This document shows positions 57,737 to 64,000 of a DNA stretch of 64,000 nt, piece by piece. Position 1 is the first letter of the stretch. Each line of letters starts with the position of its first letter. The translations under genes were made by a program, and so were the position numbers. The stretch is from Trichosphaerium sp. ATCC 40318 (lineage: Eukaryota; Protista; Tubulinea). The DNA is taken from contig JALMLS010000466.1 in assembly GCA_038496445.1 (NCBI GenBank), positions 248,001 through 312,000 on the forward strand, read 5' to 3'. The notes under the pieces are model-generated. The model was not told the origin of the DNA. It was given only the letters and a program-made list of their open reading frames with translations, and did no database searches.

Positions 57737-59864
57737 ATGAATACAAGTCAACAATCCATCTGCGTTTTTCTACTTTTGTTTGGGATTACCCTTACAAATG
57801 GCTTTATGTTTCCACAATCTCATGTCAACGTAGACCTTCAGGAAGAGGTACTAAGCTGTGTACAAGCAAACCTTTTTTTTACCAATCCATTTAGATTCCT
57901 GAGGCTTGTCCTGTTCAACCCCAACCGTTGGAATTACCTACACCATTACCCAGTAAACTAACAGACGCGCTAAATGCTGCGGAGCAAGAACTGAAAGCGC
58001 TCATGGCGAGTAATACTGTACGAATACTTTATTTCTTTTTTTTTCTTATCACAATTTTAAGTCTTGCTTTGCTCCTGGTGCCTCTGCTATTGCTGTTTAT
58101 CAAGACAAAGTAATTTGGTCTTTCAACTCAGGAATGATTGACAAATCAAAACCAACCCTCGCACCCACTGGAGATACACTCTTTCGGCATGTTGCATACT
58201 TCTAACCTCAATAACTTTTTTCCATAGCATTGGAAGTGTAAGTAAACTATTCCCTACTCTCCTCCTATACCAAGCAGCTTCTGATCCTAACATTCTCGTA
58301 AGCAAACAGAATTAGTATGATGTCGTACTCACGAACTTGTATAGCTATCACTTGACGATGATATAACTAAGCAAGTGCCAAATTTCTCAATATTAGATTC
58401 AAAAGCTGTTCCTACATCAGTCACGTGGAGAGCCGTTGCTTCGCAGCTCTCAGGTCTTCCTAGAGAGGCACCATGTACCCTCATTGAATGCTCAGCGTCT
58501 ACGGATGAAATTCTAAAAAGACTTTCAACAAAAAGGCAGGTGTTCCCAATGTGGAAGCGTCCATCGTATTCAAGTGAGTACATACTTTTCTTACAATCTA
58601 TTTTTGTTCTTCTCCAGTTAACTTTCTTTTTTCTAGACTTGGGGTTTGATCTAATTGGTCACTTGATTGCCGAGAAAGTATACAATACTAATTTCGAAGA
58701 CTTGGTGGCAAAGAACATTACAGACAAGCTGTCTATGAAAGATACCGGTTTTGTGCTTTCACCAAGTGTCAAAAGCCGTATGGCGAAAGCATACAATATA
58801 GCAGGTGTTGAAATGCCACTATACGATCTAGGTACACTTTATACGGGAGTACTTTATTCTAACATCTCACAGGATGGTCAAGTCCAGCAGGTCAGATGTA
58901 CTCCTCCACAAATGATCTCGCAAAATTTATGATAATGTACCAACTCTTTAGCGACTTTATTTAACACATGATTATCACGTGTACTAAATTTATTAGGTTC
59001 TTAAAGGATAACAATGGTACTTCAGAGATACTTCCTGCTAAATGGTACTTGCTCCATCTCAAATGGAGGGTATTTTGACAAAACTGTTAGGCTTGCTGAA
59101 ATGATGAATCCAGTTTTTGTTAACCAAGATGGACAGTCGGGGTTTGGGTGCGTTTAGTTGTAATGTATGAATGATAATAATCACGTATAGAACTCCTTGG
59201 GAGATGATGTATTTGCAAAACTACTGGGTGAAACAAAAAGGTGGAAGCTTAGGAGGGTACATTTTTAAGCCAAATACTTTTATTAAAAATTTACCTTGGT
59301 TTTGTAGATTCCTATCAAGCTTTAACGTCATACCTGAAATACAACTTGGTTTCTCTATATTGTTCAATGGCCCTTGTTCAACGAGTCAAGCGACTGATTC
59401 ATTTATGAACAACGTTATACCCGCATTAAAGTCTGTAAGTTATTTATATCCAAAGTCAAAAGACGTTTTCTAAACAATCTTAGGTACTCGATGATTTGGC
59501 TCCACCAAGCCCTCCACTACCACCTGATTACACTAAATACGAAGGTTAGTACTGCTTTCCTTTTGATTCTATTGATTGAATGTACTTAGGTGTTTATGAT
59601 CCTCAAACAAAGGTTGCGTATGTTGAAAGCTACGGATTGATTATCTATTTTCAACTTGCAAGCTATACTCATTCGTACTACCTATCTTGGACCGATGGTG
59701 ATAATTTCCAATTGTATGCTGGTGTTAATTTGATGGGTACTTGTATACAGGGAGAACTTGGCGCTGCAGTGGGCCAATGGGTTACCTTCACCGAAACGCC
59801 AAACGGAGGCATGTCATTCACAGTTGAAGGCCTTTTTGGTACTATCGTATTTACACGCCAATGA
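57737..59864 (+). CDS. Secreted serine beta-lactamase-like protein (LACTBL1/AmpC-type fold)
   Basis: Signal peptide; FRIGSVSK (SxxK); SGLPRE; PSYSNLGF (YxN); PAGQMYS; KGGSLGG. Confidence 0.85.
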
Positions 59865-60153
59865 AATATGTACCATCCACCGACAATAAATCAGTACTCG
59901 TGAAACACTTAATATTACATACCGCGCTCGTTAGCTAGAATTCTAAATCTTGAATTTTTTGTTGCAAAAACACGTGATATTTCTGTACAAAGAAGTCTGC
60001 ATAGAGCATTGGTGTATTGACGCCATGTTTACCTTACCCGATAGTGCTTTTTCCAAAAGCAAGGTTGGTTAGTGACATTGTAAAGTCAAGGAAATGTCAA
60101 AGTGAGTTAACGACTTTTTTTTTTCGATTAACTACAAAGAGGCGGGAAGTACA

Positions 60154-62575
60154 ATGCAATCGTCTCTAACTAGCTTCTTTAAAAGCGCACCAGGCAATAG
60201 TAAGCCAAAAGCGAGGTCTCCACGCAAACAAACAGAAGAGGAAAAAGAATACCTTAGTTTATTAAATAATGACTGGAAAGACGTCCTAAACGTTGAATTT
60301 CAAAAGGGATACATGCGTAGGCTATTTACATTCCTCAAAAAGGAGGAAGAAGGTGGTGCAGTTGTATACCCTCCAAAAATCGAAATATTCAGCGCATTCA
60401 ACTTAACATCATTCTCTAACGTTAAAGTCGTTATGATTGGCCAAGGTACTATTCGTTACAAAACAATTTTTTATCCATTTTATCCTTTGAGCCTATTTTG
60501 ACATGTTTTTACTCCAGATCCTTATCACAACCCAAAACAAGCCCATGGACTTTGTTTTTCTGTAAAACCTGGTGTCAGAAGACCACCAAGTCTAATTAAC
60601 GTATATAAAGAGCTCGAAAATGATATAGAGGTATGTCACGTGTTATTGTTTGATCAAAAGCAAAAGTTACAAAAAAAAAACAAACCGCTGACAATTTTTT
60701 GATGTTTAGGGATTTACAAGGCCTAAGCATGGTTTTTTGGAAAAGTGGGCTCGTCAGGGTGTCTTCATGCTTAACAACGTTCTTACAGTAAGACGTAATG
60801 AACCAAAATCTCACAGTAACAAAGGTAAGCTTCAATCATGATTCTGCTCATCTTCGTCATCTTCTTCTTCGAATGCTCACGTGATTTTCTTCGTAGGGTG
60901 GGAGACATTTACTGATGCTGCTATAAATGCTATTGCACGCAAATCGAAGGTACAAAGAAAAAATCCTTCCAGCTTTTACAACAATATGAATCCTTGAAGA
61001 GTTTTTTTGCTTACATTGCTTGTAGAATGTTGTGTTTATGTTATGGGGTAAAGACGCACAAAAGAAAGCACGATATGTAAATGAAAGCGAACATAAGGTA
61101 TTAAAAGCCGGACATCCATCACCACTTAATGCAAGAGGAGGTTAGTAAAAGTAGCTACTTTAAACGGAATATCTTTATCCAAAAAAAAAAAAAATTGGTT
61201 GCACTTTGCACTTGACTAACCCTCTTCTACTTAGGTTTTCTTGGTTGTAGACACTTCACTATTGCCAATGACTATTTGAAGAAACATGGTAAAGAACCTA
61301 TCGACTGGTGTCTAAGTGATACAGTCAATGAGAAGGCTTACTTTTCAAAGTTTTCAAAACCAAAACCTGCCCCAAAACCAATACCACCGAAACCTACTAC
61401 CCAAAAAACAAAGCCTAAGAGTACAAAACCTAAATCAAAGCCTAAAGATGTAGAAATGGAGGATGCGCCAGAGGTATGATCAGAAAAGTAACAACGGATG
61501 AGCTCTTTTTTTTCCTTTTTCTCTTTGTTTCTTTGTCTTACGTTCTTTTTTTGAAGGAATCCTCTGAGCCTGAGGTCGTAATACCACCAAAACCTAAAAG
61601 ACCCAAGAATGCATACATGTTTTATATTGCTGATAAACGTGAATCTGTTAAAGCAGAGAAGCCGGAGCTCAAGGTAACTTAGTTCATAAGTTTTTTTTAC
61701 TTAACTTATCTTCTTCTGTTTTGTTGGCTTTCTTTTTTTTTAAATGTCCCTTCGCTTATTATCATGTTAGCCTCAAGAAGTTGTTAGTTATGTTAGTGGT
61801 CTATGGAATGCTATGAGCAGTGAAGAAAAACAAGTACGAAGCAAATAGTAGAGTAACTTTAGTTCAACAAAAAAAATGAAAGATTCTGAAATACAACTTT
61901 CAACAAACATACTCACCTCACCTAGCCATACACAAAGAAAGCAAATAAAGATAAAGAACGTTATAGACGTGAGAACGAAATATGGAAAGCCAAGCACGGA
62001 TCAGACGAAGCTGCTTCTAAAAAAAGAAAGGCTCCTGACTCTTCAGACCAAGATGAACCGAAGTCTAAAAAACAGAAAAAATCGAAAAAAGTACAGAAAA
62101 AAAAAAAAGTTAGCACCACATACTTTTCTTGGTATTTTCTTTGCTTGTTAACCTTTTTTTAAGGATCCTCTAGCACCAAAGCGCTCAAAGAACGCGTTTA
62201 TGTTCTTTACAGAGCACATGAGGGTCGTCTTGAAAGGTACTTATACTTTTTTTCCTACAATATTCTGTTTCTTACTCCTTGGTTAGAAGAGCACCCTGAG
62301 CTTAAAGTATGCGATTTTAATACTCTTGAGTACAATTTTTATGGCGTTTTAACGTTTGTTTAGAAGCAGCAAGATGTTTTACGATTGATTGGAGAGCGCT
62401 GGAAGGAATTAAATGAAGAGGACAAAAAAGTACAATAAATTAAACAACTTAACCCTGTTCGTTTTCTAACGTTTTTTTTCTCTTCTAGCCTTTCTTAGAG
62501 AAACAAAAGAACGATAAAGAGCGTTATGCTACAGAAATGAGTGAGTATAGAGCTACTAAGACACCTGAAGAGTAG
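60154..62575 (+). CDS. UNG: Family-1 uracil-DNA glycosylase with N-terminal PIP box, fused to two C-terminal HMG boxes
   Basis: MQSSLTSFF (PIP box); [39 protein letters not shown]. The frame continues through a K/P linker into [11 protein letters not shown]...W...DKERY and [12 protein letters not shown]...GERWKEL...DKERY. Stop at 62575. Confidence 0.9.
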
Positions 62576-62730
62576 AATAAAAAGAAAACAACATAGAAGA
62601 CTTGACCCGTAAAATTAAATGTAAAAAACCCTTATAAAGTTTTTGAAGTAAGATCGTGCTACTTTCAATAGGCTTTTTCAACTGAAGTTATTGTGAGTTG
62701 TGAAAACGCTCCAAACTTTAATATAGACTC

Positions 62731-63103
62731 CTACCAAATGACAGTCGTCATCGCTATACATTTGATAGTAATGATGTTGAAAGAAGAGAGATTTTTCCTT
62801 ATAACTTGGTTGATAGCATGTGCTGCAACCACAAAGATTATAATCCAAATCGTCAAGATGATAGAGGTAATACAGCATGCTATGGAAGCTTGTAAAAGTG
62901 TAAACTTTGAAATTGCAAGGTCATTATCCATATCTTTATCACATAACTACAGAACATTGTTCCAGATCAAGATCTCAATGTTGCAGCAAGTGAACAAGAG
63001 GAGATAAATTGGTTGTCAATGGTGGCGCATTAGGTATTGCTACTGAACGAGCAAAAGAGCTTGGATAATTGATGGATTAATCACGTGTACAATTAGATGA
63101 CAT
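62731..63103 (-). CDS. Possible small single-TM hypothetical protein
   Basis: Hydrophobic ORF 62731-62931 plus small spliceable upstream exons. No family recognised. Confidence 0.3.
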
Positions 63104-63311
63104 TGATAAAAGTTTGTTGGTAGAACTTGGGTTCACAGTCTTTGAACACGTGTCAAAGCGATAAAAGCAAAGAAAAACAAGTTGTATTAGAAAATTATTT
63201 AATTAAATCACATAAACGCTATGTATGCTTAACAAACTTGTTCCATAATTAATCACATAAACACCATTCATAACATTTTTAAATTGAAGCAACACCCACA
63301 TAGGTACATAG

Positions 63312-64000
63312 CTATACCTTCTTGTCCATATCTTGGGCAATCTTTGCGAGCATTGCAATGCGTTCAGGGGAGAATTCATGAATCTCAGCCATAGTGTCCA
63401 TTCTCCAGACCATCTTTACATAGAATTTTCTTTCGAGCTTGATTACAGTCAGTTAGTGGTACTACGATCGCGATTTGAACTAACGCACCTCTAAATGACC
63501 TAAAGTTGTATTGGCTGCATTCATCAACTCATCTATGGCCTGAACAGCTCGTTTACTTTGAGATGGTTGTTTTATAAACCTTGAAAATATGTGGTTATCT
63601 ACGCGTTATCAGTAATGCTGTGATGTGTAATGCGATGACCGCCAATAAACAATAATCGGTAGTTATACCTATTGAGTTTGTTCCGAAGATTTTTAAAAAG
63701 TGCGAAGAATCCAATGATTTCTTGATCATCTTTATAGACTCCTTTATTTCCTCAGAATGCTTTTTTTCCTTGTGCTATTTTTTCGCGTGTAAGCGACAAG
63801 CATGTTTCATTGAAACTGAAAAAATACAAAGCGTTGTACCTGTACAAGTTCTTTAAGTAACTGTAAAGGTTGTATAACTAGATCTACATGTCGCGGTATT
63901 CTACAAAATATTGTTAGACAAACTTGACCTTTTCGTCTTTAAACGTACTTAACGTTGCCCAGTGTATTGGCTTTAGTGTCACAACGTCTTCTATCCGCTC
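63312..64000 (-). CDS. 3' end of a hypothetical protein that starts beyond the window end
   Basis: GT-AG-linked exons ending LERKFYVKMVWRMDTMAEIHEFSPERIAMLAKIAQDMDKKV-stop. Confidence 0.5.

What the first reader, a model, noticed from the sequence alone, without database searches (positions are those of the whole stretch)
60154..62575. Uracil-DNA glycosylase fused to tandem HMG boxes (PIP-UNG-HMG-HMG)
Seen: an intact family-1 UNG with catalytic GQDPYH and HPSPL motifs and an N-terminal QxxLxxFF PIP box. There is no stop after the usual terminal PIDW. The frame runs through a K/P-rich linker and a phase-0 intron (GAG|gt...ag|GAA, about 61474-61556) into two complete HMG boxes of the HMGB-like, non-sequence-specific type. 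Known: UNG enzymes normally end near PIDW, HMG boxes bind bent or damaged DNA and loosen nucleosomes, and mammalian HMGB1 acts in trans in base excision repair. Inference: this is a hard-wired PCNA-recruited repair module that bends DNA or opens chromatin for uracil excision. I do not know this architecture from model organisms.
Basis: partly seen in the sequence, partly recalled or inferred. Interest (0 to 1): 0.82.

Follow-up and report, generated by a model that had tools for sequence, protein, structure and literature searches.

The report
Uracil-DNA glycosylase fused to HMG boxes
An amoeba gene really does join a complete uracil-removing DNA repair enzyme to two DNA-bending HMG boxes in one spliced message. 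I found no such natural fusion in the papers or relatives I could search, and it would let one test directly how DNA-bending proteins help base excision repair.

Summary
Window 60154-62575 (+) holds a 13-exon, 505-codon gene with twelve GT..AG introns of 50-97 nt.

- **UNG part.** Exons 1-6 match uracil-DNA glycosylase (UNG) models colinearly. All catalytic motifs are intact, and a Q-x-x-L-x-x-F-F motif sits at residues 2-9.
- **HMG part.** Exon 6 runs 55 codons past PIDW. Intron 6 (61474-61556, phase 0) joins it in frame to seven exons encoding two HMG boxes.
- **Transcript evidence.** Spliced cDNA contigs from two runs of one sample bridge that intron. One 875-nt contig runs from exon 1 to exon 8. 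Box 2 (exons 10-13) has no contig cover, but it has no start codon of its own.
- **Distribution.** The genome has two other UNG genes, at least one ending canonically. Four other protist or metagenome UNGs I could read also end just after PIDW/INW. A Thecamoeba UNG with almost the same N-terminus carries a Macro domain instead.
- **Novelty.** No paper or scanned homologue shows UNG plus HMG, but I could not run an exhaustive architecture search.

The function is inferred: a nuclear, PCNA-recruited UNG whose HMG boxes tether and bend DNA. They may also help product release at the abasic site, as TFAM does in trans for human UNG1. The 'non-sequence-specific' label is only partly supported, because both boxes carry Asn at box position 10.

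The scan noted the same stretch before only as this same first reading (s1-409565).

The parts
60154..60445 (+). Exon 1: start codon, N-terminal tail and first part of the UNG core (ends ...VVMIGQ + first base of the Asp codon)
   Evidence: NCBIfam NF003589 positions 7-67, E 7.7e-16. PDB UNG hits to 2e-11. Covered by spliced contigs X1, X2, X4 and X6.
60157..60180 (+). PIP-box-like motif Q-S-S-L-T-S-F-F (residues 2-9)
   Evidence: Sequence. The same motif sits at the N-terminus of other eukaryotic UNGs: Thecamoeba MQTSLSSFF, Gocevia QSSITSFF, Physcomitrium QKSISSFF. It occurs in 10 of 157 N-terminal extensions against 0.4 expected from shuffles.
60518..60630 (+). Exon 2: completes GQ-DPYH (catalytic Asp98, Tyr100), HGLCFS and the RRPPSL loop
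   Evidence: NF003589 positions 69-104, E 9e-16. Intron 1 is removed in four runs.
60710..60824 (+). Exon 3: FMLNNVLTV with the uracil-recognising Asn157
   Evidence: NF003589 positions 105-141, E 8e-13. Pfam UDG E 0.024. Alignment.
60897..60949 (+). Exon 4: (G)[17 protein letters not shown]
   Evidence: Flanking introns are removed in X1, X2 and X4. At 17 aa it is too short for the family scans.
61026..61140 (+). Exon 5: LWGKDAQ and HPSPL (61113-61127; His221, Leu225)
   Evidence: NF003589 positions 161-196, E 9e-13. Pfam UDG E 0.004.
61235..61473 (+). Exon 6: end of the UNG fold (PIDW 61297-61308), then a 55-codon extension with no stop. It is K/P-rich ([30 protein letters not shown]) and ends acidic.
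   Evidence: NF003589 positions 200-225. Relatives stop 2-9 residues after the W. Run X2 carries an in-frame +AGT after 61419.
61474..61556 (+). Intron 6, the junction intron: 83 nt, GT..AG, phase 0. If retained, the frame stops after two codons (TGA 61477-61479).
   Evidence: It is removed in cDNA contigs X4 record 8 (875 nt, exon 1 to exon 8) and X2 record 7, with 99-117 letters on the shorter side.
61557..61673 (+). Exon 7: acidic spacer, then the N-terminal strand and helix 1 of HMG box 1 ([12 protein letters not shown]...)
   Evidence: Pfam HMG_box positions 1-27, 31.8 bits, E 1.9e-7. PDB TFAM, HMG-D, HMGB1 and NHP6A.
61771..61833 (+). Exon 8: helix 2 of HMG box 1
   Evidence: Pfam HMG_box positions 29-48, 14.2 bits. 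Joined to exons 7 and 9 in contigs X1, X2 and X4.
61926..62090 (+). Exon 9: helix 3 of HMG box 1 (to about 61988), then a 31-residue basic/acidic inter-box linker with KKRK
   Evidence: Pfam HMG_box positions 49-69, 15.3 bits. PDB HMG protein and NHP6A. Contig cover ends at 61997. Composition.
62164..62236 (+). Exon 10: start of HMG box 2 ([15 protein letters not shown]...). There is no in-frame ATG upstream of it.
   Evidence: Pfam HMG_box positions 1-19, 14.9 bits. Frame read. No RNA cover.
62287..62306 (+). Exon 11: 20-nt micro-exon, (E)EHPELK, end of helix 1 of box 2
   Evidence: It matches EKPELK of exon 7 at 5 of 6 residues. Model only.
62364..62429 (+). Exon 12: helix 2 of HMG box 2
   Evidence: Pfam HMG_box positions 28-48, 19.6 bits, E 0.0013. 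PDB TFAM and Abf2.
62489..62575 (+). Exon 13: helix 3 of HMG box 2 and stop codon TAG (62573-62575)
   Evidence: It matches exon 9 at 10 of 28 residues, including DKERY. No Pfam hit on its own.
62576..62581 (+). AATAAA directly after the stop codon. No AATAAA or ATTAAA lies between 61300 and 61560.

Best explanation
This is one gene, not two. It encodes a 505-residue protein with these parts in order:
- an N-terminal PIP-box-like motif (residues 2-9);
- a complete and apparently active family-1 uracil-DNA glycosylase (to about residue 254);
- a lysine/proline-rich linker of about 65 residues;
- two HMG boxes (about 322-390 and 429-498), about 40% identical to each other, separated by a 31-residue basic linker that contains KKRK.

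**Shown.** The gene structure, the intact motifs, and the splicing of UNG exon 6 to HMG exon 7 in RNA.

**Inferred.**
1. The N-terminal motif recruits the enzyme to PCNA at replication forks, as in human UNG2. The basic stretches act as nuclear localisation signals.
2. The HMG boxes and the lysine-rich linker give the glycosylase extra non-specific, minor-groove, bend-preferring DNA affinity. This would keep it on chromatin and on distorted DNA, and would favour base flipping where DNA is wrapped or bent.
3. The boxes may also compete with UNG for its abasic-site product and so speed turnover. Tandem-HMG proteins (TFAM, mouse TFAM, C. elegans HMG-5) do this in trans for human UNG1.

The fusion looks lineage-restricted. 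The two other UNG paralogues in the genome would cover the remaining UNG roles.
For: - **Gene model.** 13 exons, all introns GT..AG of 50-97 nt, one open frame of 505 codons.
- **UNG.** Five exons hit the UNG equivalog model NF003589 colinearly, with bits 58.4 + 58.2 + 48.5 + 48.4 + 24.3. The exon-wise alignment shows GQDPYH, HGLCFS, PPS, LNxxLTV and HPSPL all conserved.
- **HMG.** Exons 7, 8 and 9 cover HMG_box profile positions 1-27, 29-48 and 49-69. Exons 10 and 12 cover 1-19 and 28-48.
- **Fusion on RNA.** Joint 61473|61557 is seen in contigs of X2 and X4. The X4 contig starts with a SMART template-switch oligo tail (my own knowledge of that sequence), lacks seven introns and runs from exon 1 to exon 8.
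- **No independent HMG gene.** Retaining intron 6 gives a stop after two codons. There is no poly(A) signal between 61300 and 61560. The only ATG in frame with exon 7 (61476) would add a hydrophobic, polypyrimidine-encoded leader. Exon 10 has no upstream ATG.
- **Coding constraint in the linker.** The indel polymorphism there is exactly one codon.
- **Shared origin of the boxes.** They share two phase-0 intron positions and 31 of 77 residues.
- **PIP motif.** It is conserved at UNG N-termini well above chance.
- **Precedent for HMG helping UNG.** PMC11662936.
Against: - No biochemical or localisation data exist.
- The fusion joint is seen in two runs of one sample from one study only. Those are assembled contigs, not raw reads.
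- Exons 10-13 have no RNA cover at all.
- Both boxes have Asn at box position 10, a hallmark of sequence-specific HMG boxes (own knowledge; Murphy et al. 1999, not re-read here). The binding mode may therefore not be purely non-specific.
- UNG Ser247 of the Gly-Ser loop is Lys here, although it also varies in other amoebozoan UNGs.
- PMC11662936 also shows that high HMG occupancy inhibits repair enzymes, so a tethered HMG could restrain as well as help.
- The joined protein was neither folded nor searched as a whole.
Confidence: 0.6

Rival explanations
1. Mitochondrial nucleoid enzyme. The tandem HMG boxes with a roughly 30-residue basic linker are TFAM/Abf2-like. On this reading they anchor a UNG to mitochondrial DNA, and the basic, serine-rich, acid-free N-terminus serves as a presequence rather than a PCNA motif.
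For: - The best solved-structure matches of exons 7 and 12 are TFAM and Abf2.
- Two boxes are separated by a 31-residue basic linker.
- The first 27 residues have six K/R and no D/E.
- The genome has two further UNG genes that could serve the nucleus.
- TFAM-type proteins stimulate UNG1.
Against: - TFAM's top rank partly reflects two boxes per chain adding their scores. HMG-D, HMGB1 and NHP6A follow closely.
- The N-terminal Q-x-x-L-x-S-F-F matches the N-terminal motif of UNGs from Thecamoeba, Gocevia and moss, and of nuclear human UNG2 (own knowledge). Import would cleave it off.
- KKRK and KPKARSPRK look like nuclear localisation signals.
- No targeting predictor was available.
Confidence: 0.15
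2. Conjoined or read-through transcript. UNG and an HMGB-like gene would be separate neighbouring genes, and the spliced chimera would be a minor by-product.
For: - The joint is seen in only one sample.
- Four other readable protist or metagenome UNGs end just after PIDW/INW.
- Retaining intron 6 would give a UNG ending ...APEV*.
Against: - The HMG part has no credible start codon of its own.
- There is no poly(A) signal after exon 6.
- No contig shows intron 6 retained. The only X1 piece inside it is a 33-nt low-complexity match with loose ends on both sides.
- The junction is in frame at phase 0.
- The linker indel is a whole codon.
Confidence: 0.05
3. The HMG boxes give sequence- or site-directed targeting (Asn at position 10, Met wedge). 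On this reading the protein removes uracil at particular loci or acts as a DNA-binding regulator, rather than as a general repair enhancer.
For: Both boxes read K-R-x-K-N-A-[YF]-M-F, with Asn where HMGB, HMG-D and NHP6A have Ser (sequence; class rule from own knowledge).
Against: - The profile and PDB ranking puts SOX/TCF-type boxes last, at E about 0.7.
- The rest of each box (DPxAPKR start, DKERY helix 3) is HMGB-like.
- No target motif is known.
Confidence: 0.08

Closest known systems
Human UNG2 (nuclear family-1 uracil-DNA glycosylase)
   Same: The catalytic motifs are the same (GQDPYH, HGLCFS, LNxxLTV, HPSPL). A PIP-type motif sits at the extreme N-terminus, followed by a basic, disordered tail (the human sequence is from own knowledge).
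   Different: - UNG2 ends a few residues after PIDW and has no HMG box.
- UNG2 carries its RPA-binding helix in the same N-terminus. Here an RPA-motif-like helix (LTQEQLERIQANRLRALAKR) sits on a different paralogue (L005).
- The N-terminus here (M-Q-S) does not fit the human FAM72A degron AcM-[ILV]-G.
TFAM / HMG-5 / HMGB1 acting in trans on base excision repair
   Same: Tandem HMG boxes working with a UNG. In PMC11662936, TFAM, mouse TFAM and C. elegans HMG-5 stimulate human UNG1 at sub-saturating ratios. The paper shows TFAM displacing UNG1 from AP-DNA and forming Schiff-base/lyase products.
   Different: Those are separate polypeptides with adjustable stoichiometry. Here the ratio is fixed at 1:1 in cis. 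No lyase activity is shown for this protein.
Other natural UNG fusions found here
   Same: A family-1 UNG joined to another DNA-damage module:
- Thecamoeba quadrilineata PIP-UNG-Macro (P0041);
- an ENA protist UNG-GRF zinc finger (P0049);
- endonuclease III-UNG fusions (P0005, P0153 and others);
- tandem UNG in Plodia (P0001).

   Different: None carries an HMG box. The Thecamoeba protein shares the MQ[ST]SL[ST]SFF start but has a different C-terminal domain. Accessory domains therefore seem to have been added independently in amoebozoan lineages.
Repair and chromatin proteins with a built-in HMG box (human PMS1, SSRP1/FACT, polybromo; own knowledge, plus PMC4965029 for FACT in BER)
   Same: An HMG box hard-wired to a DNA-repair or chromatin-handling protein.
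   Different: None of these is a DNA glycosylase.

Membership tests
Family-1 uracil-DNA glycosylase (UNG) | Motif A GQDPYH (water-activating Asp, Tyr that excludes thymine) | tested here: met
   G96-Q97-D98-P-Y100-H, split by intron 1, which is removed in four runs
Family-1 uracil-DNA glycosylase (UNG) | Motif B HPSPLS (catalytic His, intercalating Leu) | tested here: met
   HPSPL at 61113-61127, residues 221-225
Family-1 uracil-DNA glycosylase (UNG) | Uracil-specificity Asn in LNxxLTV and stacking Phe in HGLCFS | tested here: met
   FMLNNVLTV (Asn157) and HGLCFS are aligned with reference UNGs
Family-1 uracil-DNA glycosylase (UNG) | Full-length colinear match to an equivalog model | tested here: met
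   NF003589 positions 7-67, 69-104, 105-141, 161-196 and 200-225 of 227. The simple sum is 237.8 bits against a cut-off of 223, without exon 4. Scored exon by exon, so the sum is rough.
Family-1 uracil-DNA glycosylase (UNG) | Uracil excision activity, Ugi sensitivity | not testable with these tools
   Needs recombinant protein
HMG box (Pfam PF00505) | Box 1 reaches the Pfam gathering score | tested here: met
   Exon 7 alone scores 31.8 bits (cut-off 25.4). Exons 8 and 9 add profile positions 29-48 and 49-69.
HMG box (Pfam PF00505) | Box 2 reaches the Pfam gathering score | tested here: inconclusive
   No single exon passes. Exon 10 scores 14.9 bits and exon 12 scores 19.6 bits at colinear positions, a rough sum of 34.5. 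Exon 13 has no hit but matches exon 9 at 10 of 28 residues. The joined domain was not scored.
HMG box (Pfam PF00505) | L-shaped three-helix fold | not tested
   Folding needs the joined exons, and that step was left out
HMGB/UBF-type (non-sequence-specific) HMG class | Closer to HMGB, HMG-D, NHP6A and TFAM than to SOX/TCF/MATA boxes | tested here: met
   PDB ranking: TFAM 1.6e-5, HMG-D 2.6e-4, HMGB1 1.4e-3, NHP6A 0.01, SOX about 0.7.
HMGB/UBF-type (non-sequence-specific) HMG class | Ser at box position 10 (own knowledge of the class rule) | tested here: not met
   Both boxes have Asn: [10 protein letters not shown] and [10 protein letters not shown]
PIP-box PCNA ligands | Consensus Q-x-x-[LIMV]-x-x-[FY]-[FY] | tested here: met
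   Q2-S-S-L5-T-S-F8-F9. The same motif occurs at the same place in other eukaryotic UNGs, 10 of 157 against 0.4 expected from shuffles.
PIP-box PCNA ligands | Binding to PCNA | not tested
   The genome's PCNA (C198, L019) is split over at least four exons and cannot be given by one reference. No complex job was sent.
TFAM/Abf2-type mitochondrial HMG proteins | Mitochondrial presequence | not testable with these tools
   No targeting predictor here. The N-terminus instead matches the PIP-type N-terminal motif of other eukaryotic UNGs.

The most novel reading that the evidence does not exclude
The fusion may be a self-contained 'excise and hand off' enzyme. After UNG removes uracil, the tethered lysine-rich linker and HMG boxes would capture the abasic site in cis. 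They would displace UNG from its product and perhaps nick the strand by Schiff-base beta-elimination, as TFAM does in trans. That would make this a natural, chromatin-competent, quasi-bifunctional uracil glycosylase/lyase, which would be a new kind of glycosylase as far as my searches reach.
Probability: 0.15. Interest if true: 0.75.

Novelty: new variant of a known kind. Interest (0 to 1): 0.55.

Why it matters
How glycosylases find and excise lesions in bent, wrapped or crowded DNA is an open question in base excision repair. So is how they let go of the toxic abasic product.

HMG-box proteins (HMGB1, TFAM, the SSRP1 subunit of FACT) have been implicated in this only as separate factors. Their effects depend on concentration, being stimulatory at low occupancy and inhibitory at high occupancy (PMC11662936, PMC4965029).

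A natural 1:1 covalent UNG-HMG-HMG protein is a 'Rosetta stone' fusion. It argues that the partnership is functionally meaningful. It also gives a simple system, full-length against HMG-deleted protein, for measuring what HMG boxes do for uracil excision.

The finding also shows that amoebozoan UNGs have picked up different C-terminal damage-response modules: Macro in Thecamoeba and HMG here. An unattributed ENA sequence carries a GRF zinc finger. Finally, such a fusion may interest people who engineer glycosylase-based base editors.

Tried and rejected
1. **Representative search with exon 1.** The best hits are only 44-54% identical. Of the nine top hits longer than 400 aa, I scanned six, plus four shorter ones, and none has an HMG box. 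Two of the three unscanned ones (P0067, P0101) have the UNG at their C-terminal end.
2. **Word search with the UNG domain of fern protein P0017.** It returned plants and Nth-UNG fusions, and only 120 of 1880 hits are listed. It is uninformative on architecture, so I did not spend a second costly search.
3. **ESM Atlas with exon 6.** No usable hit.
4. **Metagenome scan with exon 1.** No relative found.
5. **Pfam UDG over the own genome.** It missed this gene because the exons are short. The exon-1 protein search found it, plus two paralogues.
6. **PDB search with the N-terminal 30 residues.** Nothing relevant.
7. **Idea that the N-terminus is the substrate degron of this genome's FAM72-RING protein (note s1-378544).** The human degron is AcM-[ILV]-G and the start here is M-Q-S. 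The idea is not supported on motif grounds and I dropped it.
8. **PCNA-PIP complex prediction.** Not sent, because the PCNA gene is split into at least four exons.
9. **Specific TFAM kinship.** Rejected as unproven, since TFAM's rank benefits from two boxes per chain.
10. **Joined 505-aa product.** In one search a script joined the exons only to count length and stops. It kept the string in /scratch without printing it.

Full report
**Observation.** I read window 59500-64000 and translated the three forward frames. A script then fixed the exon borders.
- The gene has 13 exons on the + strand: 60154-60445, 60518-60630, 60710-60824, 60897-60949, 61026-61140, 61235-61473, 61557-61673, 61771-61833, 61926-62090, 62164-62236, 62287-62306, 62364-62429 and 62489-62575.
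- All twelve introns are GT..AG and 50-97 nt long, most with a pyrimidine-rich 3' end. The joined frame is 505 codons with a single terminal stop.
- The ATG at 60154 is the first in its frame, after a stop 17 codons upstream. AATAAA follows the stop codon directly.
That includes the phase-0 intron GAG|gt..ag|GAA at exactly 61474-61556.

**The UNG part.**
- NCBIfam uracil-DNA glycosylase equivalog models hit exons 1, 2, 3, 5 and 6 colinearly. For NF003589 the positions are 7-67, 69-104, 105-141, 161-196 and 200-225 of 227, with E-values from 8e-16 to 2e-5. Exon 4 (17 aa) fills the gap.
- Exon 1 also matches solved UNG structures down to E 2e-11.
- I aligned the exon pieces as fragments to reference UNGs. 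GQ-DPYH, HGLCFS, the PPS loop, LNxxLTV and HPSPL are all conserved.
- The only notable change is Lys for the Ser of the Gly-Ser loop. This position also varies in other amoebozoan UNGs in the same alignment.
- Reference UNGs end 2-9 residues after the [IV][DN]W motif. Here the exon continues for 55 more codons.

**The N-terminal motif.** Residues 2-9 read Q-S-S-L-T-S-F-F, which fits the PIP consensus.
- Near-identical motifs sit at the N-terminus of UNGs from Thecamoeba quadrilineata (MQTSLSSFF), Gocevia fonbrunei (QSSITSFF) and Physcomitrium (QKSISSFF).
- Among 157 fetched UNGs with an N-terminal extension, 10 carry a strict PIP motif. Shuffled extensions give 0.4 on average.
- The motif is therefore inherited, not a chance match. 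Binding to PCNA itself was not tested, because the genome's PCNA gene is split into at least four exons.

**The HMG part.**
- Exon 7 alone passes the Pfam HMG_box gathering score (31.8 bits, profile positions 1-27). Exons 8 and 9 match positions 29-48 and 49-69. Box 1 is therefore complete.
- For box 2, exon 10 matches positions 1-19 and exon 12 matches positions 28-48. Exon 13 has no hit of its own but shares DKERY and 10 of 28 residues with exon 9.
- The two boxes are 31/77 (40%) identical. They share two phase-0 intron positions, after PELK and after E[ED]K[QK]. This points to a common two-box or duplicated ancestor.
- The best solved-structure matches are TFAM, Abf2, HMG-D, HMGB1 and NHP6A. 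SOX proteins appear only at E about 0.7. TFAM's lead is partly due to two boxes per chain.
- Both boxes carry Asn where HMGB-type boxes have Ser (box position 10), next to a Met wedge as in HMG-D and NHP6A. That class rule is my own knowledge, not a test made here. The label 'non-sequence-specific' is therefore only partly supported.

**Is it one gene?** The look-up of sequencing runs found no run on record as RNA, but it did find four holders. Laying four runs on 59900-62900 gave spliced contigs, which can only come from RNA.
- X4 record 8 (875 nt) begins with the tail of a SMART template-switch oligo (my own knowledge of that sequence). It lacks introns 1-7 and runs without a break from exon 1 to exon 8.
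- X2 record 7 independently joins exons 6, 7, 8 and 9.
- X1 and X6 come from a second study. They confirm introns 1, 3, 4, 7 and 8 but do not cover the junction.
- No contig retains intron 6.
- X2 carries an extra AGT after 61419, which is exactly one Ser codon in the linker. This is what one expects if the linker is coding.

Several points argue against two separate genes.
- Retaining intron 6 stops the frame after two codons.
- No poly(A) signal lies between 61300 and 61560.
- The only ATG in frame with exon 7 (61476) would add a leader translated from the polypyrimidine tract.
- Exon 10 has a stop just upstream and no ATG.

There are also limits. The joint is seen in two runs of one sample only. 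Nothing covers the stretch beyond 61997, so box 2 is attached by gene-model logic alone.

**Distribution.**
- The genome (70.3 Mb, 642 contigs; window = C4:248001-312000) has two more UNG genes. One is on C16 and ends PIDWNL*. The other is on C33, and its N-terminus carries an RPA-motif-like helix. The HMG exons are single-copy. At least a dozen other HMG-box loci exist.
- The exhaustive representative search with exon 1 found 1412 UNGs but none above 54% identity.
- The long hits have other architectures: tandem UNG (Plodia), UNG-Macro (Thecamoeba), UNG-GRF zinc finger, and Nth-UNG.
- Four other protist or metagenome UNGs that I could read to their ends stop canonically (L006, L007, L010 and Gocevia P0269).
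- Exon-wise identity to any UNG is 47-55%.
- Paper searches found no natural UNG-HMG fusion.
- I could not run a true architecture query, because the joined protein may not be searched and the tools list only the top hits. 'Undescribed' therefore holds only as far as these searches reach.

**Mechanism.**
- *Shown:* an intact UNG and two HMG boxes on one spliced frame.
- *Inferred:* nuclear and replication-fork targeting through the PIP motif and the basic NLS-like stretches ([13 protein letters not shown]).
- *Inferred:* extra non-specific, bend-preferring DNA affinity from the K/P-rich linker (13 K/R and 11 P among the 55 residues after PIDW) and the HMG boxes.
- *Possible:* help with product release. 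PMC11662936 reports that TFAM, mouse TFAM and C. elegans HMG-5 stimulate human UNG1 at sub-saturating ratios. It shows TFAM displacing UNG1 from AP-DNA, forming Schiff-base intermediates and having lyase activity. It also reports that high TFAM occupancy inhibits repair enzymes. A covalent 1:1 fusion would fix that stoichiometry.
- *Rivals:* a mitochondrial nucleoid enzyme (0.15), a minor read-through chimera (0.05), and sequence-directed targeting through the Asn-10 boxes (0.08).

**Other agents' notes.**
- They call the organism a marine amoeba and mention a FAM72-RING fusion and a HELLS with an inserted HMG box in this genome. I did not verify any of these.
- I did check whether this N-terminus fits the human FAM72A degron AcM-[ILV]-G. 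It does not, since the start here is M-Q-S.

**Verdict.**
- This is a new variant of a known kind: a family-1 UNG with an accessory module I did not find described.
- Interest is moderate to good. It gives base excision repair a natural test case for what HMG boxes do for a glycosylase.

Noticed in passing
L004 (G000:C16:17388-20570), about 1381-2389 +: A second UNG paralogue, 34% identical to exon 1 over 62 residues. It has introns and ends canonically at ...TPIDWNL*. Its motif A reads GQDPYF rather than GQDPYH.
   Followed up: partly
L005 (G000:C33:368456-371608), minus strand, about 1907 down to 170: A third UNG paralogue, 47% identical to exon 1 over 51 residues. Its N-terminus carries LTQEQLERIQANRLRALAKR, which resembles the RPA-binding helix of human UNG2 (own knowledge). 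The PIP and RPA modules of UNG2 thus seem to be divided between paralogues here.
   Followed up: partly
P0041 (Thecamoeba quadrilineata, EukProt) and P0049 (ENA contig): Other protist UNGs carry different C-terminal modules. P0041 has a Macro domain and an almost identical MQTSLSSFF start. P0049 has a GRF zinc finger.
   Followed up: partly
window 61419/61420: Run X2 has an in-frame AGT insertion (one extra Ser) in the K/P-rich linker. X4, from the same sample, does not show it. This is probably an allele.
   Followed up: no
window 60418: The X4 cDNA contig starts here with a template-switch oligo tail, inside exon 1. This is either a truncated reverse-transcription product or an internal 5' end. 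An internal start would lack the PIP motif and part of the UNG fold.
   Followed up: no
G000: C1:584545 / C429:6360; C77:19923 / C179:7607; C88:208552 / C5:761503; C115:8165 / C498:4286: HMG-box matches come in pairs with equal or near-equal scores on different contigs. This suggests haplotigs or recent duplicates in the assembly. The UNG-HMG gene has no such twin.
   Followed up: no
G000:C11:483200-483325 (L002): A weak UDG-superfamily match (21 bits, profile positions 1-43) that is not a family-1 UNG. It may be one of the UDG-like genes noted by other readers (s1-397201, s1-409521).
   Followed up: no
window 59580-59864 +: The last exon of an upstream + strand gene ends at 59864, only about 290 nt before the UNG start codon. 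The intergenic spacing is compact.
   Followed up: no
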